Shown one piece after another: positions 31,301 through 46,698 of a DNA stretch of 64,000 nt. Each line of letters starts with the position of its first letter. Position 1 is the stretch's first letter. Origin of the DNA: Ruditapes philippinarum. Its lineage: Eukaryota. The notes beneath the pieces are model-generated. The model did not search any database, was not told where the DNA came from, and worked only from the letters and a program-made list of their open reading frames with translations. The stretch lies in NCBI RefSeq assembly GCF_026571515.1, contig NW_026855141.1, positions 62,001-126,000 on the forward strand, given 5' to 3'. Position numbers and translations under genes: made by a program.

Positions 31301-32155
31301 ACAAGTCCATTTACTTGGTGAGGGTCAAATGAAGATACGAGAACAGTGAAAACGGAAGTGTAATTAAATTGTTTCGAAGTATAAAAGTAAACAAAAACTG
31401 CCTCAAACTCGATTTAAAGTGAAAATATGATATATAAAGTATACACATAATCCTTGTATATTGTTTTGTTTGAATTACTGTATAATTTGATACTGCGTAT
31501 TAATTCTTACTTCTTATATACATGTCTTCAAGGGCGAATGATATTTATAATTGAGTAACGATAAATTTAGAATAATTATCACCACGTGTGGAAAGTCACA
31601 GGTGCCATTTTCAGTCAAATATATTAAACGTTATGGGCTTGAAGTTTATGGTGGTCTTTGCCAAGAAGTAAAAATATCTCAAAGCAGCGCTATATTCATA
31701 GGGTGGCCGCACGTGCCAAGAATGTGTCGCCAAATGACATCTGATTTTGGTTTCCCTCAACTATTTAACTTACAGGAAAACAACCATATTTCTATTACTA
31801 AAGAAAACAATTACACGTAGTTCTAGGAAATATATACAAAATAAACAAATCTTTTCTTAATAAGGTCATTAAGTAGCTATTAATCGTGTCAGGAATCTTT
31901 TACTACGAAAACATAAGTGAATGGAATTTGAAATAAAAAATAAAACAAACCTGCCGCATCGAGAACATCTTTGTCAATTATATCTGTCAACATACAAAAC
32001 AGAGCATCTACCCCGGCAATGTTTTTAATAAGTTCTTCACGTGGAATGGCCTCATCGCTCTCCCATATTTTGACATCATAATCCGAGAGCAGGTCGATCC
32101 CGGGCTGTGGAACCCGTCGTGTTATATAAATCTTTTTCTTTCCTTCCGATAGCAT
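28362..32155 (-). CDS. GRHPR: Glyoxylate/hydroxypyruvate reductase-like dehydrogenase, paralog 3, ~325 aa
   Basis: Exons 32155-31951, 29583-29413 (absent from the ORF track; GPGLSVVATMSVGFEHIDV...), 28963-28362; 978 nt. Motifs WKPMWLCG, GLGRIG, INSGRG, DVTEPEP, LPHMGS. Confidence 0.94.
30359..30535 (+). mobile_element. tRNA-derived SINE (second family)
   Basis: TGGCCTAGTGG A-box and GGTTCGAGCC B-box; a related degenerate copy lies at ~59565-59790. Confidence 0.6.
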
Positions 32156-32877
32156 ATTTTTATTCTTTTCTCCGAATTATGTATCGATACGTTTAAACGA
32201 TTGAAATCGTTAGAATAAAAACAATTCTTGTTTGATTATATATTCAAACCTTCCCAGAACTGATGTAATTTAGAACAATGTTTCGTGACTTTGAGGATTT
32301 TTCCAATACCATTGCCTTCCTTGATACAACGCGCATGACCTTCAGTGCATTATGAAACTTGCAAGGATAGGCTATAAGAGGGGCGCATATTGGGAAATCG
32401 ATTTATAACTTTTTTATTTCCTTGATCAGTGTCCGGAAGTAAAGGGAGATAACAGCAATGACTTTTAAGAACACTGTTATGCAAGAGTTATTTTTCTTTA
32501 TTAGTAGTGAGAACATCAACAATAATGATAATAATAATTATCATAGTAATAAATGACTGCATATTGCACAAAATTTTATGGTATGTGGGGGATGATTATT
32601 TCTGCAAGTCGTTAATAGCGTTTTTTTCTACATTAATTGGTTTCATTTGTTACATTTTAAAGGCCCATTTAGCCCAAACTAAAATGCAAATACTTTTTAT
32701 TCGATTTTTTTTTTACTTTTAATATCATGTTGATTTAGTATTTTGAAATCTCACAATACCATTTTATTTACACTTTTTTGCTATCTTTATCACAAATAAT
32801 TTCAAGTTCGACGGTATTTTTCTCGGGTGATGAGCACGTTTTTAACCTATGATAACACCACTGTAACACACAAATAT

Positions 32878-33112
32878 GAGCCGCGTCACGACGAAACCAA
32901 CATAATGGGTTTGCGACAAGCATGGATCCAGACCAGCCTGCGCATCCGCGCAGTCTGATCAGGATCCATGCTGTTTGCTTACAAACTCTATAACAAGTAG
33001 AGAAACTGATAGCGAACAGCATGGATCCTGATCAGACTGCGCGGATGCGCAGGCTGGTCTGGATCCATGCTGTTCGCAAACCCATTATGTTGGTTTTGTC
33101 GTGACGCGGCTC
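32878..33112. mobile_element. Palindromic ~235-bp MITE, copy 3
   Basis: Same family; lies in the divergent promoter region between GRHPR paralog 3 and the MIF4G gene. Confidence 0.88.
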
Positions 33113-33999
33113 AAATATTCATTTCTGAGGCTTTGTGTGCCTTTTAGCGTGCATATAAAAGTATTTTAAAAATTCTTGTTTGATATATTGACAGCGGGCT
33201 GGTGCGTTGAAAACGGAAGTTGGATAGGTAACATTATACTTATATAGCATAATTAGTTATATACATGTATTTCAAGTTATCAGTATTATAATTGTCATTG
33301 ATCAAATGTAATCAAAGCACAGATGGCGCTGAATTTGTTTGGGTCTCAGAATGTCAGAAAGGTGAAGGTTGTGAGATTATAAACCAATTTGTTTTTGTAT
33401 TTTCGCTACCATTATTTGTTTGGTCTGACAACCCAAACTAATAAAAAAACTGAGCTACTAAAAACAAACAACAACAAAAAAACACAAAAAAAACACGGAA
33501 AACTGTAAAGTATTTTATTTTTTGTCTGTTTAAACTTAGATGGGGGTAATCTCATTTTACGTTTGACAAGATTAAAACTCATATTTGTTGTTATTGGGAT
33601 CTTGTTTATGTGGAATCTTGTTTATGTGGGATCTTGTTTATCTTTCGCAAGCTATGTAAACTTTATGAATGACTCATCGTGCGTTATCTGGCCTGACCAT
33701 TTTAAGAAAAAATATTTAATCGAATGTACACGTGTATAAACTTCGTGTAATTTATATTAATATTTTATGTCTGGAAATATTATCTACAAAATTATATCAT
33801 CTACAGAATCATAAAAAACAAGGTATTTATGATTATTTTAAGTCCAATCGTTTTATAAATAACCTTTTATGTCTAATTCATGAAAAAATACTGACATTTT
33901 GGTAAATAAACACTTTTACCTGTTTTATATTTTGTTTTATGAGAGCGGTTCTGTAAGACCATTTGAAGTTACTACTTATTGTGCTTGAAGTTTATATAC

Positions 34000-36900
34000 A
34001 TGGACGGTGTCAAAGGTCAAGAGCATGGTCAGATTGTTATGCTTCACAAAGCTGAAAATGCATGGAAACCCAGATGTCTTGGACCATGGGAATGCAGTGT
34101 CGAAGTTAAGTTGAATAAAAAATTATACATTACTAGTATCCCACAGACGCTTGGGGGTCAGATCTTGTCCCCAACGTGATACGCCCCTGTAAACACTCCA
34201 TCAAAAATATTTTAATATTTAATTACGAATGGGACACTGCTACAACGATATAACTGGTTTTTAAACAATTAAAACATATCTGAAAATATTACCTTATACC
34301 ATCAAGTCTCGATGGTAAAAGCTTTTTTTTTTCAGTTTGAAAACCAGTTGTATCGTTGTAGCAGATGTCCCATTCGTGTTTAAATATTAAAATATTTTTG
34401 ATAAATTGTTTACAGGGGCGTATCACGTTGGGGAACATGATCTGAGACCCAAGCGTCTGTGCATTAACCAGGCTTCTAATAAAAATACAACAAATCCGGA
34501 TACAACAGAGCTAGTGGGGTTTTTTAATCTGGTAAATTGGTTAAGATCTTTTTGACAGTATATAAGTATTTTAAAGACCAGATGAAAAATAAAGTGACAA
34601 ACAACATAGATAAGGGCAAATTATTAATAGATCCAGTTAAACAATATACGTGTATATGTAAAGTGTTTGGAATCCCACATCAACACAGTTATTAAGTTTT
34701 AGATATACCCACACATTTTATTGCTCATGCAGGAAGACGTGTAATACCACTCAGTCCATTTCTTACAGACACGAGGGTTGGGGGCACTTTATCAGAACCA
34801 CTAGGTCATTGCACTGCTTTAAATAAAGAGATGACAATGTGAACCCGGCTCAGTGCAGCATGTGACACCAATAATAAACGTTTGAAGCACAATCCAAATA
34901 AATTATAGCGGATCAATCGAACATCGAATAAAATATATAATAACTGACATTTTGCGTAATTTCAGGAATTATATATGAAACTCAGGGGCATTTTGAATAA
35001 GATGACACCAGAGAAATGCCAAACCCTTATTTGCCGTGCCAAACGTTTGAATATAGATACAGAACCCAAACTGACAGAAGTCGTTAATCTTATCTTTGAA
35101 AAGGTGAGATACTTTTGAGTTTTTGTTGTTTTTTTTATTCATTAATTTTATTTTATTTTGTAAACATGGCTGGAAGGTCACAAATCTTCCCAAGTCTTTG
35201 CATTTAAGGCGGTGCTGGAAGGTCTGTCTTACGTGTACACACATTTCAGGAAGTTTGCATGGATTTTACCAAATTTGTTTGTTTTCGCATGTCCGAGATT
35301 TAACTTCGAAATGGCTGGACCGAAAATCAATGTCCGTATTATTCTCCGTGGTTGGGAGATGTCCAAGGTGATACGATTGCCTTACTAAGACCACTTGCTG
35401 ATTATTCAAAAAGTATGTCTTAATAGTAGTATGGTCTTAATTTCGGGAAAAGTGTTCCTTAAAGGAGTTTTGGTCTAATGGCTTCAATTGGAATTTAATG
35501 CTTACAGTTTATTTGTTTAATTGAAGTCATAATTGCATAATACAATGTCTTTTTATCAATCATTTATAAATTATTAATCAATTATGTTAGTACGAGTACA
35601 TTATTAGTCATATATTTTCTTGACATGTTATATGGCCCTATATAAACAATCGTTTGCATATACATGTATATAAAAGCCATTAGTTATATAACTTATATAA
35701 ACGTCACTTTTATACAATGAAAAGCGACGTTACAAACTGAAACGTGAATAATGATAAACTAAATCATCATGATTTTACATAATGGTGAGAAAAAAAACAA
35801 CAGGCAAACTATGTTCATAAACTTTAATGGCAAATCTTATGCATGTTGTTATTTCAGGTGATTATGGAACCTACTTACAGTTCTGTATACACTAACATGT
35901 GTCACTGCATGAAAGTATGTATATAGATAATACATGTACTTATTTGACAACGTTATTTTCTCTCTAAATATGTGCACACTTGATTTGTTGTTTTTGTTTT
36001 ATTTCTGGCAACGTAATTAAATCTTTACATTGAAATAATCTTGCAGATAAGACGTCGTTTAGAAATAAAATTGTTTGTTTTTCCCGTCATCTCATTTCTG
36101 TTTCATTTCAATGTGATCAAGGGAAATAAACGCGTATCGACTGAAAATAATTTTGTATCATTTTAATGCCCTTGTTTGGCTTTAAGATTGGTAAAATATT
36201 AAGTAAAATATTAAGTAAATTTTTAAAATAAAAATAACAGGTCCTCATTGAGGAAAAAAACACCAAACAAATTACTAATAAAATCTATGTAATTCAGCTG
36301 CGAATCATTTATATATCACCGGACATGAAATGTTGTTTGTAACAAATGGTACAATTTTAACAGCGATCTTGCGAAGTTAACAAGCGAATCCATATTCTTT
36401 TAAAGATTCGTAAGTTACCTCCTCATCTGACTGCTTGCCATCGTAATTACATTTAGAACAATATATTAAAACATATTTTCAGATCAAAGTGAGATCGGAA
36501 CAACAAGAGGGTAAAATGGTTACCTTTCGAGCTTTACTTTTAACAAGATGCCAAAGATTCATTCGTGAATCAAGGACTGAGCTGGAAAAGTTGAAAGATG
36601 TACGTATTTATCAATTGAAATCCTTTCATTCAGTCAGAAAGTGTCCCTTAATAATTGTTACTTATTAGTTAGTATTCAATGTAGAGATTTTAGAAAAGTA
36701 AAATTATTTTTTAGGTGGTATTGCCATCTTATCTTACTTTATCATAAAGAAATCTATACGTTTGGAAACGTTGGTATGACCGCTGACTCCAAATTCCTCG
36801 ACCCTCACCGCTTTAGTCTTCATGTATGACACGCTATCATGCAGCTTACAGAACGCCTGTGGTTAGGCCCGGTGCCCGGTCGTACACGAACAAAGCAAAG

Positions 36901-39900
36901 AATGGCACCTGAGGTCCTTCTCGACCAATTAAGCTTGAAAGTCGCCAATAATATGACAATTCCTTATTTTCTGCACTTAAATAAACGTGATTGACACAGT
37001 TGTAGGCCCTTAATTGTTGCTCCTAATTAATACTTAGTAAGCACGTGAATGTTTCCTTGAATTGTTCATTCTATGTTGTTATAACACAATTGTTTTAGGC
37101 TGATGAGGCTACTGTTAGCGAGTACCACTCAAAATTATTTGGTGCTTACAGGTAAATATATTTATAAACTTTTACCCAGTCATACAAAACAAATAAAAAA
37201 AAATGAAGTTAAATAAGTCTGTAGGCTAGAATAGGGAAATACAATCTGATCATTCTTGTCTATGGTATAGTTTTTGTCCTTTACTGTTGTAACATGCCGA
37301 GCAATAGAAAGTTCTCTCTCCATTACGATCTATAATGTAACGGACCAATTCTTGGAATATATATCTCGTTAACTTGATAAGAATTTATTTCAACCATTAT
37401 TCATGAACGTGTTTGTTGAGCAACATATGGTGGCTGATTTCTGCCTAGTCCGTAGTAGGAGTTATAACGCTTATCCATTTTAACGCACACCTTTAACACA
37501 ACAACTGAGAAAAATATACGCACTTTAGGAATCTGGTCGAACTTTCATTTTGGAAAATATTTTATAACATCGAGTTATTGAAATCACTAGAAAATAAATT
37601 GAACACTTTACCATGATTTTTCAAAGTTAACATATGCAATGGAAACATTTGATCTGACGGTGATGGTGTACTGAATGATATGGTGTTGAAGATATTGAGT
37701 AAGCGTGATATTGCTCTGATTATATGGTGTCGAAAAGGCAGTATTATTGTTGCCTAAGATATATTTGACTGATTATATGGTGCAGGGAAAGGCAAATTGT
37801 ATTGTCGCCTTAGGTATATGTTAAGACTTTGGAAGACTTCTTCCAAGCATAGAAATAAAATATTTTAGATTGTCCATTTTTCCTTTTGCCAAATTAAGTA
37901 GAAAACTGCAAGCAGTCAAAATTCATATCGTATCATTTGTTTGTATTTTGAAGATTTATAGGTGACCTATACAATAAAGGCATCGTTATAGAAAATGTTA
38001 TTCACGACATGATTTTCAAGTTATTAAAATGGAAGGACCCAGTTTCGCTGCAATGTCTTTGTGTGATTTGGCCAATAGTAGGGGAAAAGTTGGATGTTAG
38101 TAAAGCAAAGGTGAGAGGAAATTTTCTTTTACATATATTGGACTTGATTTGTCCTCGTTTACATGTATTGAACTTCATTTGTCTTTGTTTACATATATTG
38201 GACTTGATTTGTCCTCATTTACATATATTGGACTTGATTTGTCCTCGTTTACATGAATTGGACTTGATTTGTCCTCGTTTACATGAATTGGACTTGATTT
38301 GTCCTCGTTTACATGAATTGGACTTGGTTTGTCCTCATTTACATATATTGGACTTGATTTGTCCTCGTTTACATGAATTGGACTTGATTTGTCCTCGTTT
38401 ACATATAATGGACTTGATTTGACCTCGTTTACTTCAAAATAGTACAATTAGAAAATTTTACCATGCAAATTGATACTGAAAGAGACGAAGTTTTTGATAC
38501 GAATATTATCTTCTACATATAAAAATGAAACGCAAAAGACCATAGGCCATTGAATATACTTAAAGGCATTAAAGCCTTAGAAATGAATATATTTTTTCTT
38601 CTTTAGAAAGAGCAGACATGTGTTTAAAACTATTTTGATAATAGAATTAGAAAAACAAGTTAGGTGCTCATCGCCTAGAAAAGAAGAGCTGAATATGAAA
38701 TTATTTGTCCTGAAAATAGCATGGTATTTTAACGTTTCGTCAACTAATTTAGTCCCGTGATGCAATGTGTTACCTTCCTTTACAAAAAAAAGAAACAAAA
38801 AAGAAACAAAACCAAAAAGCAAACAAACAAAATTGCCGCTTACTCTTCAATTCAACAGGAAATACTCAGAAAATGAGCTGATGTACGTAGTTTGCAAAGT
38901 ACAGGTAAGTCACGGACTAAATAGGAAATGAAAACTCGTGTCATTTTTGTCTGTTTGATCATTCACATAGTGTAACCAGTACCCCTATGATATTCAGCTT
39001 TTCCAATTTAATTGACGTTGAGTGATTTATTTCATTCTCTGCAGTTTCCACATGGGCAAACATAATTAATGTACTTTTGCCTGCATATTCTTTGTGCAAT
39101 ATATAATCTGCGGATTACTTTGTGATCACTGTCCATTTTTCCATGTTCCATGTAGCCTTCACCAGACTTGATCCTAGTTTAATTTTAATTTCCATGGCCA
39201 TGTGTAATTGACAATGTACCATACAATAAATATATATTCTAATAAAAATTTAACCAGCCAGCCTGCATATAAAACAAATAGTACTTGCATTCATCTTTTA
39301 AAACTTTTCACACGATCAAATGATTTTCCACTTTTCCTTTGTGTTTACTGTGTGATCCCAAAATATTTGTTAAATCCATTTGTGAATTCTTAAAATTGCA
39401 TGATTTGGTAACATTTGCCAAGTCTGAATGATTAATTCCATTGTTAAATCAATCACTGTATGACACTAATATTTGATATAGATAGTACAAATTATTTATA
39501 TAGATATTATACATGCCAGAATGATAAAGGAGGGAATATTTTAGCTATTTGGTCAATGGGTGACTGTTTGGAAACTGAATCAGAACAATTTAAGGTTTTG
39601 AAAACAAAAATCATATTCTGAGGCTGAATGGGTCTTTAATTAACTACTTTTGAGTTTGATATAGACCAGTTAAGCGTTCTGTTATAATTTATTCAAAAAT
39701 GTTTATTCAGGTGTTGTTATTTGTTTGGGTCGTCAGACCAAACAAATAATGGTAGCGAAATTTCAGAGTATAATGTTCTTAATTGCAAATGCCGAAAGTA
39801 GTCCACTTTTTTGAAGCGGTTACTTCCCTTTTGTATGTACACTAAAGCCGAAAAATTCAGGGGAGATCACTGCGTAAAGATGGTCAAAGACAGGCGCATC

Positions 39901-42071
39901 AATTTTCAAGCACAGTAATTCCCGAATGGTCGAAGGTTTCTAATATTGTTTTATTGTATTTTCTGATCGAAAATAACTAAATACAAAGCGGACATTCAAT
40001 CTCTGACACAGAAGTTTACAACAAACCTAACAACAAGTAGTTCTCAAAACAGCTTAAAACTAGCGATTTAAAAGAAAGAAATATTTTATTTTGTTACAAG
40101 TATCCAACAAATTACAACGCATTTAAAGTTAAACAATAGCGTTGGCTTATAGAATTGTCAATAAATGCACAATCACAAATTACGCGGATGAATATGATTT
40201 TATCAATGAAAATACTATTTATAACCGAATACTACACAAACCGAGTAGTGGAATATATAGATTCTACATGTCGGACTGTTTGGGCGAGAGGATTTTCGCT
40301 AAAATATTTACTGTAATTTTAAACAACAGGTTTTCCCTGAACAAAATACCTCGAAATTAATAAGGATTACAAACCCGAAATGCAATGGAAGTTCTCAATT
40401 TAGAATGACTTGATATTATTCAGACTATCTGTGTAAAACTTCTCCGTGGTACAGTGGTAACGCGCTCGCTTAGTGAGTGAGAGGTCTCGAGTTCGCATCC
40501 CAGTCGAGAAAAAAATTTTTTCTGATAAATTCTTTTTTAAGTGTTTTTGTTAAGGAAGTAGCCATGATATGCAAGGATAAAGTGTGACTGTCGTAAAAAA
40601 TGAACATAAATAATTTTTTGATGCAACTCTAGTAATGCAGAATTCCGTATGTATCAAACTCTGGTGCCTTGCAAAATGAATTATAATACATAAAAATAAA
40701 CCTATACAGGAAAATGCATACAGATATACAGTACGATTTAGATTGCAAAGATCAGAAAATACCACAGAACTTGCAGCACTTTGATTTTTTATAAATATAA
40801 ATGCTTATAGTAAGCTCCAGGATTATTTACATCTGTGTTAAACAACAGTTAAAGTCGTTACAAGCCCTAATTTAGAATAATATGGTTTTCTTCAGCCCGT
40901 TCACATATAAATTCACCGTGGCTGAAGGGTTTTCGGGCTCGCTTAGGAAGCGAGAGGTCTGGAGTTCAAATCCCAGTAAAGGTAACTCTTTTTTTTCAAA
41001 TTGTTAAAGTCAAATAAACATTGGATTGAATATCAGTGTTGCAATTAGCCTTATAGCCAATTTACTACAATTAAAACGCTGGAAAGCATTGGTGGCACTA
41101 TACATATAATCTCACAACCTGCACCTTTCTTACATTCTGAGACCCAAACAAATTCAGCACCTTCTGTGCTTTGATTTTTTTATTGCAGCGAAGAAATGAT
41201 CAGTACTTCCAGCAGATGGCGAAAATAGCAAAAGATAAGAGACAACCCGGGAACATAAAATATCGTCTGCTGAACGTTATAGATTTGAGGGCAGTAAGTA
41301 TGAAAGCAATATTTTAACTATTGTCGTCACTTTTAGTTGAAACGAATATAGAGAATTACGTTCACGTCTTTAAGGAGAAGCCACGTACATAACATAAGCG
41401 GGAACTTTACCATATAAAACCTAGAGGTCAATATATCACCACGAAATGCGCTAGTGAAGCTAAGCTCATCTCGTTTTATGCGATCCTGACTAAAGCGAGG
41501 GGAGTGGTCCTACAAGGTAGACAGTGACGACGAGAAAGGGCACCAGTGTCTACGGGCCCTTTGTACGCATTGATGGCTTAAATAGGTCTCAGTCATTTGC
41601 CTGGTACCAATAAAGTGCTTATTGCCCTCTTTACAGTGAACTACTTCCGGTTTAAAATACATTTCTTTGGCTAAAACGCGGTGGAAACGTACTCTGTGCA
41701 ATGGTCTCATAATAATTAGTTATTATTCTTGTCAAGTAGTTTCCATTCTCGTCTTTTTAAAACAAAACACATAGCGAACATAAATTCCTAACAGACGAGC
41801 GTGCAATTTACCAATAGGATTTTTTTGTTAACTATTTCTTCCGTTAGTTTCCTTTCTATTGCCCTCTATTGTATTGTTGAGGAATAACGCTATAACGCTA
41901 TACCATCGCTACATTGCTCTTAAAATCTGTATTTTTGTTTTAAATAAACTGTTTATGGTTTTGCAGAATAACTGGATCTCCAGACTACCAGTTGTTAAAC
42001 CAAAGACACTTGCTGCAGTACGAATGGATGTTGAAAAGGAAATCAGTGGCGCGGAACTTCAAAACAAATGA
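34000..42071 (+). CDS. eIF4G-derived stand-alone MIF4G-domain protein, ~278 aa, 8 coding exons
   Basis: Exons 34000-34104, 34966-35103, 35858-35914, 36483-36599, 37099-37151, 37954-38110, 41189-41293, 41967-42071 (837 nt, GT-AG, phases consistent, no internal stop). The translation is collinear with the eIF4G core: LHKAENAWKP, LRGILNKMTPE, IDTEPKLTEVVNLIFEK, EPTYSSVYTNMC, VTFRALLLTRCQ, RFIGDLY, SLQCLC, DQYFQQM, IKYRLLNVIDLR, NNW...PKT. Confidence 0.88.
34142..34461. mobile_element. MITE with ~125-bp TIRs (CACAGACG...CGTCTGTG)
   Basis: Long inverted arms; a single arm of the same family sits at ~20625-20740. No clear TSD. Confidence 0.75.
38129..38432 (+). repeat. 30-bp minisatellite, ~10 copies (TTACATATATTGGACTTGATTTGTCCTCGT)
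   Basis: Direct reading; starts ~19 bp after the donor of MIF4G coding exon 6. Confidence 0.95.
40440..40510 (+). pseudogene. tRNA-like sequence (tRNA-Pro-like body, AGT at anticodon position)
   Basis: CTCGC-TTAGTGA-GTGAG anticodon arm, AGGTC variable region, GTTCG, downstream T-run; the T-stem pairs poorly. Confidence 0.5.
40912..40985 (+). pseudogene. tRNA-Pro(AGG)-like sequence
   Basis: CTCGC-TTAGGAA-GCGAG-AGGTC-TGGAGTTCAAATCCCAG resembles eukaryotic tRNA-Pro; the acceptor and D stems are imperfect; a T-run follows. Confidence 0.5.
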
Positions 42072-42633
42072 AATCTAAATTGTACTAGAAATGCCGTGTG
42101 CTATGCATTTCCATGTGATTTGAACAAAACATACCAATTATTCCTCAATTTCCATGTGATTTGAAGGAAAACTATGGTTTTATTCCCATGTGATTTGCAG
42201 AAAGTAAACTAAAATGTGCGTCGATCCGTAGATGTTCTACAGAAATAAGTAGCTATCTCCGGTCGCAGTTTCTATATTTTATATAGAACTGAAAGGATGA
42301 ACACTAACATGTACTTATAACGATGAGTACCAATTGTTAACAGTGTCACTATAAATTTTAGGATGGCTAAGTTAATTCTCTCTATAATGCTTGTTCCCGT
42401 AGATAAATTGCAATTTTACATTATGAGTAATAAATGAAATAAAAATGCATATTTTGTTATAGATATTTTTCTCCGACAACTATTATGAATGAAAATATCT
42501 TACCTTTACTAATTATTTGTTTGTACAAAAGATTAAAAAAATTTTATAGGTCTATTTTATTCTTCTGTTGTTAAGTCAGAAGGCCATACTGAAAATAAGT
42601 ATACTTCTTACTGTGTAAACTTTGTATGTTACC

Positions 42634-42815
42634 NNNNNNNNNNNNNNNNNNNNNNNNNNNNNNNNNNNNNNNNNNNNNNNNNNNNNNNNNNNNNNNNNNN
42701 NNNNNNNNNNNNNNNNNNNNNNNNNNNNNNNNNNNNNNNNNNNNNNNNNNNNNNNNNNNNNNNNNNNNNNNNNNNNNNNNNNNNNNNNNNNNNNNNNNNN
42801 NNNNNNNNNNNNNNN
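42634..42815. other. Assembly gap (182 N) followed by a (TAT)n microsatellite
   Basis: Direct reading. Confidence 0.99.
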
Positions 42816-44889: not shown

Positions 44890-45267
44890 TGTTACTTGTA
44901 GACCGCGCAAGAAGCGCGCAATAGATTCCAGAGGAAATACACTGTTACTTGTAGACCGCGCAAGAAGCGCGCAATAGATTCCAGAGGAAATACACTGTTA
45001 CTTGTAGACCGCGCAAGAAGCGCGCAATAGATTCCAGAGGAAATACACTGTTACTTGTAGACCGCGCAAGAAGCGCGCAATAGATTCCAGAGGAAATACA
45101 CTGTTACTTGTAGACCGCGCAAGAAGCGCGCAATAGATTCCAGAGGAAATACACTGTTACTTGTAGACCGCGCAAGAAGCGCGCAATAGATTCCAGAGGA
45201 AATACATTGTTACTTGTAGACCGCGCAAGAAGCGCGCAATAGATTCCAGAGGAAATACATTGTTATT
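44890..45267 (+). repeat. 53-bp minisatellite, 7 near-identical copies plus a partial copy
   Basis: Unit TGTTACTTGTAGACCGCGCAAGAAGCGCGCAATAGATTCCAGAGGAAATACAC; a decayed copy precedes it at ~44835. Confidence 0.96.
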
Positions 45268-45723
45268 TAGGACAGTACAGTAAACACCGATAAACTGAAG
45301 AGAAAGGGAATAGTGGAGTACGATTTTATCATTTAAATAATTAACAATAAATTAAACGAATTGAGATTTAAAATTAGTGCAAGAAAATGCAATAAATTAA
45401 TTTAACCAGTTCATACAAAATACCAAGTTCGCAAAAAGAACAGATTTTGAACGAAATTCACGTGTAACGAATAGTTAAAAATGAACAAAATTATGTTCAA
45501 TCAGAAGAATTCATTGAAATGAAAACACCAACATTATATTAAACTTGAAATATTTCAACAGAGTGTAAACATAAGATTATATCAATTTAGCCATGCTTCA
45601 GAATAAAATGTCAACAGAACTTCCGCTATACCTATACACTTAAACGTGTTTACGTGGTAACGACAGATTAAAATCATTTATTCTCCATACTGTTTTTTGT
45701 CAAGATAACATTTCCTTGCTAAG

Positions 45724-46698
45724 ATGGATATAAACTTGCCAATGAGCCCTCCAGTAAACAATAACATCCAGTCGAGTTTGTGTGACAGACTGGACGCCGT
45801 TGTTTTTGAAAAGATGCGTGTCGTCAACACACAACTTGACGCCCGGCTTACACTTCAAGAAAAAATCATTAATAAATATCGCAGAGACGTGGAAAAAATA
45901 CACGCGCGTCAAACTCGAAAGATAAAGCGCGAGGTGAGACAAATTCGACAAAAGAAACCGGACTATGTGTGCGATGACTCTGATATAAGTACATCTAGAA
46001 GTCAAAACACGGTTGGTACAAGTCGACAACGATGTTTAAGTGAGCCGAGCAACTTAAGTTACTGCAGGCGGTACTATTCTCATCACTTTAACGTCAAGGA
46101 GCCGGAAAAAGAAGACAAGAAGGACAAAGACGGGAAAAAGCAGGGACCTACTGACTTCTTCAACATGAGGATGAGATTATATTTCGTCAACATGATGAAC
46201 AATATTCGTCAGAGGACACATTTGCATCATGACATACCGGACGATCTCTCTTACACAAATAGAGACAGGTTAGACAGCAACGATCTAAATCTACATTCAC
46301 ATTTCCTTCCAAAACTACCCCATAATGCTAATGCAAACTATGATATTCATGAAGAGAAAGAAATATGCGGAGCGCAACAGGATGAACCAAACGAGGAAAT
46401 CACAATTCATAGCGTTAAAGAAGAGGACGATGAAAACGTTTTCAATGAAGATGATCAAATTACAGACTTTGGAGGGATGCCTGTCCTTGCTAAAACCGAT
46501 ATTATACATGAAAACCCAAGAGATATTAATGCAAACAAGTCCTGGGACGGGAATAGACGTAGACATAGAAGTAAAGGCGGCAAGTCAAGGCGTAGAAGTA
46601 TTTTAGGATCTGGATCGGAAGAAGAGGTGGTGTATAATGAAACTGAACGTAGGAAAGCAAAGCATGCCTTCGAGAAGATCTTTGCTGGCTTATTGTAA
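45724..46698 (+). CDS. Uncharacterised 324-aa protein; N-terminal predicted coiled coil, acidic/basic low-complexity C-terminal half
   Basis: 975-nt uninterrupted ORF in AT-rich DNA, GC-richer than its flanks, preceded by a splice acceptor (TTTTTTGTCAAG, 45704). No family recognised with confidence. Confidence 0.8.
   Translation: MDINLPMSPPVNNNIQSSLCDRLDAVVFEKMRVVNTQLDARLTLQEKIINKYRRDVEKIHARQTRKIKREVRQIRQKKPDYVCDDSDISTSRSQNTVGTSRQRCLSEPSNLSYCRRYYSHHFNVKEPEKEDKKDKDGKKQGPTDFFNMRMRLYFVNMMNNIRQRTHLHHDIPDDLSYTNRDRLDSNDLNLHSHFLPKLPHNANANYDIHEEKEICGAQQDEPNEEITIHSVKEEDDENVFNEDDQITDFGGMPVLAKTDIIHENPRDINANKSWDGNRRRHRSKGGKSRRRSILGSGSEEEVVYNETERRKAKHAFEKIFAGLL

What the first reader, a model, noticed from the sequence alone, without database searches (positions are those of the whole stretch)
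33185..42071. Hidden 8-exon 'mini-eIF4G': an intact gene encoding only the eIF4A-binding core of eIF4G
Seen: eight short exons splice in phase into a 278-aa ORF that follows the eIF4G middle region from the AWKP motif to the NW...PKT motif and then stops (TGA at 42069-42071). A TATA element (~33154) and a small non-coding exon ending at 33227 lie upstream, and the opposite-strand GRHPR gene starts at 32155, so there is little room for a long N-terminus. Established: full eIF4G also has PABP- and eIF4E-binding (YxxxxL) regions and MA3/W2 domains, and the isolated middle domain binds eIF4A and RNA and can support cap-independent initiation. The anchoring Trp (AWKP) and ILNKxTP are kept, while other conserved positions have diverged (TPEKC, SKLFGAYR, IKYRLLNV, shortened acidic helix). 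Inference: a lineage-specific truncated eIF4G paralog acting as a cap-independent initiation factor, an eIF4A sponge, or a decoy against viral factors. Its motifs look eIF4G-derived rather than like PAIP1, MIF4GD or CTIF, and it lacks the MA3/W2 domains of DAP5.
Basis: partly seen in the sequence, partly recalled or inferred. Interest (0 to 1): 0.85.

Follow-up and report, generated by a model that had tools for sequence, protein, structure and literature searches.

The report
Clam mini-eIF4G: HEAT-1 domain only
The Manila clam carries an expressed, intact but very fast-evolving partial copy of its translation factor eIF4G that keeps only the helicase-binding domain. The gene is real and already predicted in RefSeq, and what it does is untested.

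Summary
Eight GT-AG exons (34000-42071, + strand) join in phase into a 278-aa ORF that ends at TGA 42069. RNA contigs from two studies join E6-E7-E8 and run through the stop into the 3'UTR. An independent transcript-derived protein (P0151, 279 aa) covers all eight exons.

The gene is not hidden. RefSeq lists it as XP_060586589.1, "eIF4G1-like" of Ruditapes philippinarum, 240 aa, starting in exon 2.

It is a DNA-level partial duplicate of the clam's canonical eIF4G (contig C3108, about 26 exons). Intron positions and phases are the same, and no other eIF4G exon lies in the window. Synonymous sites are saturated, yet the frame and all 14 splice sites are intact, so the gene has been kept by selection. 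Its tree branch is about 20 times the median. It has lost 18 of 47 residues invariant in canonical eIF4G.

The anchoring Trp and Thr773 are kept, but the invariant Asp982, which contacts the eIF4A N-terminal domain, is Asn. The protein lacks the eIF4E, PABP, RNA and eIF3 sites and the MA3 and W2 domains, and it is smaller than the minimal ribosome-recruiting core. The most likely role is a free eIF4A-binding modulator or competitor; this is inferred, not shown. Interest is moderate.

The parts
33155..33161 (+).
   Evidence: Sequence read. No transcript-start data were obtained.
33185..33227 (+). Proposed 5' non-coding exon (donor GTAACA at 33228); unverified
   Evidence: Sequence read. If it is spliced to an acceptor just upstream of the ATG, it brings an in-frame TAG. 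No reads were laid here.
34000..34104 (+). E1 coding part (35 aa): start codon and the HKAENAWKP Trp motif. The 5' edge of the exon is not mapped.
   Evidence: P0151 starts MDGVKGQ.... It matches the parental exon at C3108:103662-103627. W is invariant in 31 canonical eIF4Gs.
34966..35103 (+). E2 (46 aa), first HEAT helices, ILNKMTPEKC. The RefSeq model starts at Met 34975.
   Evidence: MIF4G profile positions 3-44. 57% identical to the parental exon of the same 138 nt.
35858..35914 (+). E3 (19 aa)
   Evidence: The parental exon is 60 nt with the same acceptor position.
36483..36599 (+). E4 (39 aa), with an in-frame 10-codon deletion relative to the parent
   Evidence: Covered in runs X1 and X8.
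37099..37151 (+). E5 (53 nt, ends in phase 2), shortened acidic loop, 9 codons shorter than the parent
   Evidence: The parental exon also ends AG|gtaaat in phase 2. Covered in X8. The junction is seen in P0151.
37954..38110 (+). E6 (157 nt), FIGDLYNKG...VSKAK, with acceptor GAAG
   Evidence: MIF4G profile positions 105-160. 50% identical to the parental exon of the same 157 nt. The X1 contig starts here and joins to E7.
41189..41293 (+). E7 (35 aa), last HEAT helix; holds Asn in place of the invariant Asp982
   Evidence: MIF4G profile positions 165-201. Joints 38110>41189 and 41293>41967 in RNA contigs. Residue comparison.
41967..42071 (+). E8 coding part (34 aa plus TGA at 42069-42071). The stop falls at codon 35 of an exon that has 45 codons in the parent.
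   Evidence: RNA contigs read through the stop. P0001 and P0151 both end ...ELQNK.
42072..42450 (+). 3'UTR. Covered by RNA contigs to at least 42346. AATAAA lies at 42429-42434 and 42438-42443. The end is not mapped.
   Evidence: sequence; depth 33 in bin 42070-42269; X8 pieces reach 42346.
31949..32155 (-). Neighbour, not part of the gene: first coding exon of a GRHPR-type 2-hydroxyacid dehydrogenase, which bounds the 5' side
   Evidence: ORF; PF00389, 27.4 bits, cut-off 24.6.

Best explanation
This is a real, expressed, selectively maintained gene of the Manila clam Ruditapes philippinarum. It arose by DNA-level duplication of eight contiguous exons of the canonical eIF4G gene.

It encodes a 278-aa protein with three parts:
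- a flexible N-terminal Trp motif (site 3 of the eIF4A interface);
- one complete HEAT-1/MIF4G domain;
- a short novel tail.

It has no eIF4E, PABP, RNA-binding or eIF3-binding segment and no MA3 or W2 domain, so it cannot bridge cap, poly(A) or the 43S complex.

The most likely mode of action is as a free DEAD-box-helicase-binding module. It would dock on the C-terminal domain of eIF4A through the conserved Trp, Thr773 and region ii/iv contacts. Its contact to the eIF4A N-terminal domain is altered (Asp982 is Asn). It would thereby titrate or retune eIF4A away from eIF4F rather than recruit ribosomes.

Shown: gene structure, expression, origin, domain content, fold and long-term maintenance of the frame. 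Inferred: eIF4A binding and the competitor or modulator effect.
For: Structure and expression:
- Splice sites and phases are canonical.
- RNA contigs join E6-E7-E8 and read through the stop. Exons are covered and introns are not, in two studies.
- About 0.12-0.16 of the locus's sampled words are held by the listed small-share runs, most of them only guessed to be RNA; that share is about what the exons would give.
- P0151 (279 aa) and RefSeq P0001 (240 aa) have the same junctions and the same stop.

Origin:
- The exons are colinear with the canonical eIF4G at C3108, with identical intron positions and phases. E2, E6 and E7 have identical lengths, and all length differences are in frame.
- Nothing else of eIF4G lies in the window, and no MA3 or W2 match lies on the contig.

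Maintenance:
- pS is 0.91 (saturated) against dN 0.40, with an open frame and 14 intact splice sites.
- Of 12 listed coding differences in another individual's transcripts, 7 single changes are synonymous and 3 conservative (I>V, R>K, V>I); the other two fall in one codon and together give Pro>His.

Family:
- Pfam MIF4G scores 103 bits.
- Against solved structures, human eIF4G1 scores 172 bits and DAP5 97 bits.
- AlphaFold pLDDT is above 90 for residues 31-250, and the best Foldseek matches are eIF4G HEAT-1.
- The tree places it inside the heteroconch bivalve eIF4G clade. The AU test rejects a place outside molluscs, p = 0.011.

Interface (residues as defined in PMC7470955 and PMC9177959):
- W735 and T773 are kept.
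- S767 is Gly, as in DAP5 and in 10 of 31 canonical proteins.
- Q783 is Arg.
- D982 is Asn.

Limits: the protein spans human-equivalent residues about 714-1022. The minimal stimulating domain is 653-1053 and the eIF3 sites are 1011-1104 (PMC7470955, PMC12709193).
Against: - No binding test was run. An eIF4A sequence of this clam could not be obtained, so no complex was predicted.
- The protein has lost 18 of 47 positions invariant from sponge to vertebrates and 40 of 106 positions that are at least 90% conserved. These include REFE>RFIRE, LGNI>FGAY and RFMLQD>KYRLLN, so eIF4A binding may be weakened or lost.
- Two haplotypes differ at 10 of 240 residues, which fits weak constraint as well as diversifying selection.
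- No close ortholog was found in other species.
- Expression is low in the two raw-read RNA runs.
Confidence: 0.5

Rival explanations
1. It is a stand-alone cap-independent initiation factor: the isolated core recruits ribosomes to mRNAs or IRES-like leaders.
For: It carries the HEAT-1 domain of the eIF4G1 type, whose human counterpart binds eIF4A and IRES RNA (PMC9177959). The Trp motif is kept.
Against: By the alignment, the protein spans only human-equivalent residues about 714-1022. The minimal tethered stimulating domain is 653-1053, and truncation to 719 already lowers activity (PMC7470955). The eIF3-binding segments 1011-1051 and 1052-1104 are absent (PMC12709193). D982, whose charge reversal kills the tethered activity, is Asn.
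Confidence: 0.1
2. It is a transcribed relic: a partial duplicate drifting under weak or no constraint, with no function of its own.
For: The end branch is 3.1-3.9 changes per column against a median of 0.15. It has lost 18 of 47 invariant residues. Haplotypes differ at about 4% of residues. No ortholog was found elsewhere. Depth is low in two raw-read RNA runs.
Against: Synonymous sites are saturated (pS 0.91), yet 278 codons stay open. All indels relative to the parent are in frame and all 14 splice sites are canonical. At 33% G+C a random frame would carry a stop about every 13 codons. The model folds with pLDDT above 90 over the whole domain. Transcript variants are mostly synonymous or conservative.
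Confidence: 0.15
3. It is a decoy for viral factors that target eIF4G HEAT-1 (VPg proteins, IRES elements, proteases), evolving fast in an arms race.
For: The branch is very long and amino-acid polymorphism is high. HEAT-1 is a known docking site for calicivirus VPg and picornavirus IRESs (PMC4703368, PMC9177959).
Against: There is no evidence of positive selection, no infection-linked expression data and no known clam virus partner. The pattern is equally explained by relaxed constraint.
Confidence: 0.08
4. It is a neofunctionalised adaptor for another partner: a different DEAD-box helicase or a non-helicase protein. Other MIF4G modules work this way (CNOT1-DDX6, CWC22-eIF4A3, SLIP1-SLBP, PAIP1).
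For: Many canonical surface residues are replaced while the fold is kept. MIF4G domains of several families bind different partners (structures listed).
Against: The eIF4A-specific Trp motif, which lies outside the folded domain, is retained after saturation of synonymous sites. That argues for continued use of the eIF4A C-terminal-domain pocket.
Confidence: 0.14
5. It is a fragment of a longer gene whose other exons lie upstream of GRHPR or beyond the N gap.
For: An assembly gap lies at 42634-42815 and a 329-aa ORF at 45709-46695. The 5' exon structure is not mapped.
Against: RNA contigs keep the in-frame TGA and continue colinearly for at least 275 nt. Two independent protein models end at this stop. 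No eIF4G-like exon, MA3 or W2 lies elsewhere in the window or contig. P0151 starts with the E1 Met.
Confidence: 0.03

Closest known systems
Canonical eIF4G (eIF4G1/eIF4G3 type): the clam's own gene at G000:C3108:117222-85457 (-) and human eIF4G1/eIF4GII HEAT-1 (PDB 8HUJ, 1HU3, 6ZMW)
   Same: It has the same HEAT-1/MIF4G fold and the upstream Trp motif. It is 51% identical to the parental exons and about 38-40% identical to human HEAT-1 in the structural alignment (phmmer 172 bits). Intron positions and phases are identical.
   Different: It keeps only 8 of about 26 exons. It has no eIF4E or PABP sites, no RNA-binding region, no eIF3 linker and no MA3 or W2. The loop and linker are shortened. 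It has lost 18 of 47 invariant residues, including Asp982>Asn.
DAP5 / eIF4G2 / p97 (PDB 4IUL)
   Same: It is an eIF4G relative that lacks the eIF4E- and PABP-binding N-terminus. It shares Gly at the S767-equivalent position and the motif GILNK.TPEK.
   Different: DAP5 keeps MA3 and W2 and is a separate old paralog, present in this genome at C14408. The mini protein scores 97 bits against DAP5 and 172 bits against eIF4G1.
PAIP1 and SLIP1/MIF4GD (single-MIF4G proteins; PDB 3RK6, 2I2O, 4JHK)
   Same: They have a similar size and architecture: essentially one MIF4G domain acting as an adaptor.
   Different: They are only distant in sequence and fold ranking: 16-19% identity and Foldseek E around 1e-5, against 3e-15 for eIF4G HEAT-1. 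Their evolutionary origin is different.
Other short eIF4G-like predictions: Ciona intestinalis 317 aa (P0156), Gigantopelta aegis 367 aa (P0295), an unnamed 370-aa bivalve-like transcript ORF (P0028), Mercenaria 456 aa (P0012) and Sinanodonta 457 aa (P0026)
   Same: They are partial eIF4G1-type proteins built around the MIF4G domain. This shows that partial duplication of this region recurs.
   Different: None is a close ortholog: identity is at most 42-46%. P0012 and P0026 keep a W2 domain, and P0028 has lost the Trp motif. All are uncharacterised predictions.

Membership tests
MIF4G / HEAT-1 domain (PF02854) | Profile match above the curated cut-off over the whole domain | tested here: met
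   103 bits against a cut-off of 30.8, profile positions 3-203 of 203. Exon-wise matches are colinear.
MIF4G / HEAT-1 domain (PF02854) | Ten-helix, five-repeat HEAT fold | tested here: met
   AlphaFold2 mean pLDDT is 86, and residues 31-250 are above 90 with helices throughout. The best Foldseek matches are 8HUJ_B, 1HU3 and 6ZMW_g, with TM (target-normalised) 0.75-0.78.
eIF4G1/3 subfamily (as opposed to DAP5, PAIP1, SLIP1, CTIF) | Closest in sequence and phylogeny to canonical eIF4G | tested here: met
   phmmer scores are 172 bits to human eIF4G1, 97 to DAP5 and 24 to yeast eIF4G. The closest paralog in its own genome is C3108. The tree and AU test agree. CTIF was not compared directly.
Canonical eIF4G scaffold | eIF4E-binding YxxxxL-phi motif and PABP-binding N-terminus | tested here: not met
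   The ORF starts 21 residues before the Trp motif. tblastn of a canonical clam-family eIF4G (P0211, residues 1-605) finds nothing in the window.
Canonical eIF4G scaffold | eIF3-binding linker (human 1011-1104) | tested here: not met
   The ORF ends at human-equivalent residue about 1022, with no similarity after about 1013. Boundaries are from PMC12709193 and PMC7470955.
Canonical eIF4G scaffold | MA3 (HEAT-2) and W2 (HEAT-3) domains | tested here: not met
   Genome-wide HMM scans find MA3 and W2 exons at C3108 and elsewhere but none on C3628. No tblastn hit of P0211 residues 945-1484 is found in the window. The mRNA keeps the stop.
eIF4A-binding HEAT-1 | Conserved Trp motif and contact residues (human W735, S767, T773, Q779/Q783, D982) | tested here: inconclusive
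   W and T are kept. S767 is Gly and Q779 is Thr, both seen in canonical proteins. Q783 is Arg. D982 is Asn, although Asp is invariant in 31 canonical sequences.
eIF4A-binding HEAT-1 | Physical binding to eIF4A and stimulation of its ATPase | not testable with these tools
DAP5 / eIF4G2 | MIF4G plus MA3 plus W2 architecture, and orthology to eIF4G2 | tested here: not met
   There is no MA3 or W2. A DAP5-like locus lies separately at C14408 and scores only 18 bits with E6.
Processed pseudogene / retrocopy | Loss of parental introns | tested here: not met
   Seven introns lie at the parental positions and phases.

The most novel reading that the evidence does not exclude
It is a naturally evolved, genome-encoded HEAT-1-only eIF4G. 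It keeps the eIF4A C-terminal-domain anchor but has lost the invariant N-terminal-domain contact (Asp982>Asn). It would act as an endogenous regulator that holds eIF4A in an inactive, eIF4F-free state, or as a rapidly evolving decoy for viral VPg or IRES elements that dock on HEAT-1. Either way it would be a new layer of translational control or antiviral defence in bivalves.
Probability: 0.15. Interest if true: 0.7.

Novelty: new variant of a known kind. Interest (0 to 1): 0.4.

Why it matters
Free HEAT-1 fragments of eIF4G are known from protease cleavage and from laboratory constructs, where they change how eIF4A and ribosomes are used.

A gene that encodes such a fragment on its own, and that has been kept open long after synonymous sites saturated, would be a natural experiment. 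It shows what the eIF4A-binding core does when cut off from cap, poly(A) and eIF3.

It also adds a clear case of exon-block partial duplication giving a new, shorter protein in bivalves, a group known for gene-family expansion.

The practical value is modest until binding and expression context are measured. The gene model itself is already public.

Tried and rejected
- Joined model: I did not send a joined spliced model to any search tool. Exons were searched one by one by reference. Whole-protein work used database proteins returned by the tools (P0001, P0151). In one search a script indexed codons across the exon list in memory to classify variants.
- eIF4A partner: I looked for a clam eIF4A sequence for complex prediction. 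Helicase_C scans and four fetched loci turned out to be RecQ-, Dicer-, DDX47- and DDX3-like. The complex job was therefore not run.
- Orthologs: searches with P0001 and with a small profile found no protein above 46% identity outside this species. The searches depend on shared words and on length, so this is weak evidence of absence.
- Papers: Schutz 2008 and Virgili 2013 are not held. Interface residues were taken from PMC7470955 and PMC9177959 instead. A search for eIF4G paralogs in bivalves found nothing relevant.
- Divergence time: Nei-Gojobori dS between the mini gene and its parent is saturated, so no age and no branch-specific dN/dS could be given.
- Reads: the single read-laying run covered 36470-42469 only. 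The 5' exon, the TATA element and the E1-E4 junctions rest on P0151, not on reads.
- Rejected readings: retrocopy (introns are kept), DAP5 or PAIP1 membership, and continuation into MA3/W2 exons.
Full report
**1. What is in the sequence**

On the + strand of the window, eight short exons with canonical acceptors and GT donors join in compatible phases:

| Exon | Coordinates | Note |
|---|---|---|
| E1 (coding part) | 34000-34104 | start codon, Trp motif |
| E2 | 34966-35103 | |
| E3 | 35858-35914 | |
| E4 | 36483-36599 | |
| E5 | 37099-37151 | 53 nt, ends in phase 2 |
| E6 | 37954-38110 | starts with the third base of the split Arg codon |
| E7 | 41189-41293 | |
| E8 | 41967-42071 | TGA at 42069-42071 |

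Searched exon by exon, Pfam MIF4G matches E2 (profile positions 3-44), E6 (105-160) and E7 (165-201) in colinear order.

The opposite-strand ORF that starts at 32155 matches the 2-hydroxyacid dehydrogenase catalytic domain. This leaves about 1.8 kb upstream of the start codon. That interval holds a 243-bp near-perfect palindrome at 32874-33116 and the TATA-like TATAAAA at 33155-33161.

**2. Is it transcribed and spliced as proposed?**

The genome is a 1.4-Gb mollusc assembly and the window is C3628:62001-126000. A protein look-up names the species as Ruditapes philippinarum.

About 0.12-0.16 of the sampled words of 33900-42200 are held by the listed small-share runs. Most of these are only guessed to be RNA; X8 is on record as RNA. 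That share is about what the exons alone would give.

Four runs were laid on 36470-42469:
- One 509-nt contig of X1 joins 37954-38110 | 41189-41293 | 41967-42213.
- X8 shows the 41293>41967 joint, and a loose end at 41187 spells the end of E6.
- In X8, exon bins are covered and intron bins are empty.
- Coverage continues past the TGA to at least 42346, at a depth equal to or above that of E8. Two AATAAA signals follow at 42429-42443.

So the stop codon is part of the mature mRNA.

Expression is low in the two raw-read RNA runs sampled. One X1 contig covers E4 with adjoining intron-3 sequence but leaves at the E4 donor. This could be retained intron 3 or an internal start, and it is unexplained.

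**3. Public models**

A search of 1.84 billion representative proteins with E6 alone returned one 100% match, P0001. This is XP_060586589.1, [quoted passage not shown], 240 aa. It starts at the Met in E2 and ends at the same stop. The gene is therefore not hidden.

Its 90% cluster holds a second member, P0151. This is a 279-aa ORF from a 1062-nt transcript contig of a public run. It starts MDGVKGQ... at the E1 ATG, reproduces all seven junctions and ends ...ELQNK. It has one extra Glu at the E1/E2 joint, and over E2-E8 it differs from the reference allele P0001 at 10 of 240 residues.

I sent no joined spliced model to any tool. Whole-protein analyses used P0001 and P0151.

**4. Origin**

HMM scans of the whole assembly place the canonical eIF4G at C3108 (MIF4G, MA3 and W2 exons) and a DAP5-like gene at C14408. 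They find no MA3 or W2 on C3628.

The mini gene's exons find C3108 as the only significant paralog: E2 at 57% and E6 at 50% identity, full length.

Mapping a canonical venerid eIF4G (Mercenaria, P0211) onto C3108 gives about 26 exons from 117222 to 85457. The mini exons E1-E8 are colinear with the parental exons between 103746 and 95414.

Splice-site inspection shows the same intron positions and phases throughout:
- E2 (138 nt), E6 (157 nt) and E7 (105 nt) have identical lengths in both genes.
- E3 is 1 codon shorter in the mini gene, E4 is 10 codons shorter and E5 is 9 codons shorter. E1 carries a further in-frame deletion.
- The mini stop falls at codon 35 of an exon that has 45 codons in the parent.

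tblastn of P0211 against all 64 kb finds only these exons.

This is a DNA-level partial duplication of an exon block, not a retrocopy.

**5. Age and selection**

Over 211 aligned codons, mini versus parent gives 51% amino-acid identity, pN 0.31 (dN 0.40) and pS 0.91, which is beyond saturation. The split is therefore old at the DNA level.

Yet 278 codons remain open in a 33% G+C sequence, where a random frame would meet a stop about every 13 codons. All length changes are in frame and all 14 splice sites are canonical. That is not compatible with neutral decay over most of its history.

Twelve coding differences are listed between the reference and the transcripts of X1/X8. Seven single changes are synonymous and three are conservative (I>V, R>K, V>I). 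The other two fall in one codon and together give Pro>His. A few further differences were not listed by the tool.

In a maximum-likelihood tree of MIF4G regions, the protein sits inside the heteroconch bivalve canonical eIF4G clade. Its end branch is 3.1 changes per column against a median of 0.15. In a reduced set it falls in a starred five-row set, and the AU test rejects a position outside molluscs (p = 0.011).

Long-branch effects cannot be excluded, but the highest identities are also to Dreissena, Mya and Mercenaria.

No close ortholog was found in other species. The best matches are 42-46% identical partial eIF4G-like predictions. Those searches are limited by length and by shared words.

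**6. What the protein is**

- P0151 scores 103 bits on Pfam MIF4G over the whole profile and matches nothing else.
- Against solved structures it matches human eIF4G1 (172 bits) and eIF4GII, then DAP5 (97 bits) and yeast eIF4G (24 bits).
- AlphaFold2 with a 30-row alignment gives mean pLDDT 86. Residues 31-250 are above 90 as a helical repeat with the beta hairpin. The N-terminal 27 residues, which hold the Trp motif, are disordered, and the tail is of low confidence.
- Foldseek ranks eIF4G HEAT-1 structures first. PAIP1, SLIP1, CWC22, UPF2 and CNOT1 rank far lower.

The deletions relative to the parent lie in two places. One is the linker between the Trp motif and helix 1. The other is the acidic loop; from my own knowledge that loop is poorly ordered in crystal structures.

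**7. How it probably works**

All six human eIF4GI residues named in PMC7470955 match by identity the chain of 8OZ0 at an offset of +196 in the alignment. This allows a residue map:

| Human residue | Role | Mini protein | Canonical proteins |
|---|---|---|---|
| W735 | yeast W579, site 3 (PMC9177959) | kept | invariant |
| T773 | region iii | kept | invariant |
| S767 | region ii | Gly | Gly in DAP5 and in 10 of 31 |
| Q779 | region iv | Thr | Thr in the clam-family canonical eIF4G (Mercenaria) |
| Q783 | pairs with eIF4A1 D296 | Arg | Gln in 26 of 31, Lys in 3 |
| D982 | pairs with R45 of the eIF4A N-terminal domain; D982R was inactive | Asn | Asp in all 31 |

Overall the protein keeps 29 of 47 invariant columns and 66 of 106 columns that are at least 90% conserved.

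It spans human-equivalent residues about 714-1022. The minimal tethered translation-stimulating domain is 653-1053, and truncation to 719 already reduces activity (PMC7470955). The eIF3-binding segments are 1011-1051 and 1052-1104 (PMC12709193).

The mini protein therefore lacks what is needed to recruit the 43S complex. I read it as a free helicase-binding module. It is likely still able to dock on the eIF4A C-terminal domain, has a changed N-terminal-domain contact, and so is more likely a competitor or modulator of eIF4A than an initiation factor.

This step is inference. No binding test was possible, because no clam eIF4A sequence could be obtained.

**8. Rivals**

- A drifting, transcribed relic remains possible, given the very long branch, the lost invariant residues, about 4% amino-acid polymorphism and no ortholog. 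It is hard to square with the open frame after synonymous saturation.
- A switch to another partner, or a decoy role against viral HEAT-1 binders (PMC4703368), fits the fast evolution but has no direct support.
- Continuation into further exons is refuted for the main transcript.

**9. Comparison and novelty**

It belongs to the MIF4G fold and to the eIF4G1/3 lineage. It fails every other defining feature of the canonical scaffold and of DAP5.

Short eIF4G-like predictions built around MIF4G exist in Ciona, Gigantopelta, Mercenaria, Sinanodonta and an unnamed bivalve-like transcript. Tandem MIF4G arrays occur in several fishes. Partial duplication of this region therefore recurs.

None of these is a close ortholog, and none that I found is characterised. 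The paper search returned nothing on bivalve eIF4G paralogs.

I rate it a new variant of a known kind. It is already present as a RefSeq prediction, and its interest is moderate.

Noticed in passing
window 39670-41269 (intron 6): A repeat with RNA depth in the hundreds to thousands on both strands in all four runs. It shows many internal-deletion joints (for example 39952>40784) and many fixed differences from the reference. It is probably an abundant transposable element family, not part of the gene.
   Followed up: no
window 38128-38432 (intron 6, right after the E6 donor): A 30-bp unit repeated 10.2 times (90% matches). It keeps long open frames on both strands (137-aa and 90-aa ORFs). RNA coverage fades out within it.
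   Followed up: no
window 32874-33116: A 243-bp near-perfect palindrome (two 119-nt arms, 91% complementary, 5 nt apart). It is MITE-like and lies just upstream of the TATA-like element of the mini-eIF4G gene, between it and the divergent GRHPR-type gene.
   Followed up: partly
window 44890-45265: A 53-bp tandem repeat, 7.1 copies, 99% identical. It is open in all three + frames.
   Followed up: no
window 45709-46695 (+): A 329-aa ORF starting MDINLPMSPP..., with only a weak sub-threshold Pfam hit (Piezo_TM25-28, 15 bits). It is unrelated to eIF4G and was also noted by the first-stage scan (s1-804542).
   Followed up: partly
window 36470-36599 and upstream (intron 3 / E4): One 623-nt RNA-run contig (X1, depth 11) carries intron-3 sequence directly upstream of E4 but leaves at the E4 donor. 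This is either intron-3 retention or an internal transcript start.
   Followed up: no
G000:C3108:117222-85457 (-), loci L001-L004: The canonical eIF4G gene of the clam has about 26 exons. Its MIF4G exons are 82-100% identical to Mercenaria eIF4G (P0211).
   Followed up: partly
proteins P0012 (Mercenaria, 456 aa), P0026 (Sinanodonta, 457 aa, five loci away from the canonical gene by locus tag), P0028 (370 aa, transcript ORF), P0295 (Gigantopelta, 367 aa): Other molluscs also carry short eIF4G-like predictions: MIF4G part plus W2 without MA3, or MIF4G only. P0028 has lost the Trp motif. These look like independent partial duplicates or partial models.
   Followed up: partly
proteins P0002, P0003, P0007, P0006, P0055, P0195-P0199: Several teleosts (Dallia, Xiphias, Xyrauchen 'titin-like', Anguilla, Synaphobranchus) have predicted proteins with two to several tandem eIF4G-type MIF4G domains.
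   Followed up: no
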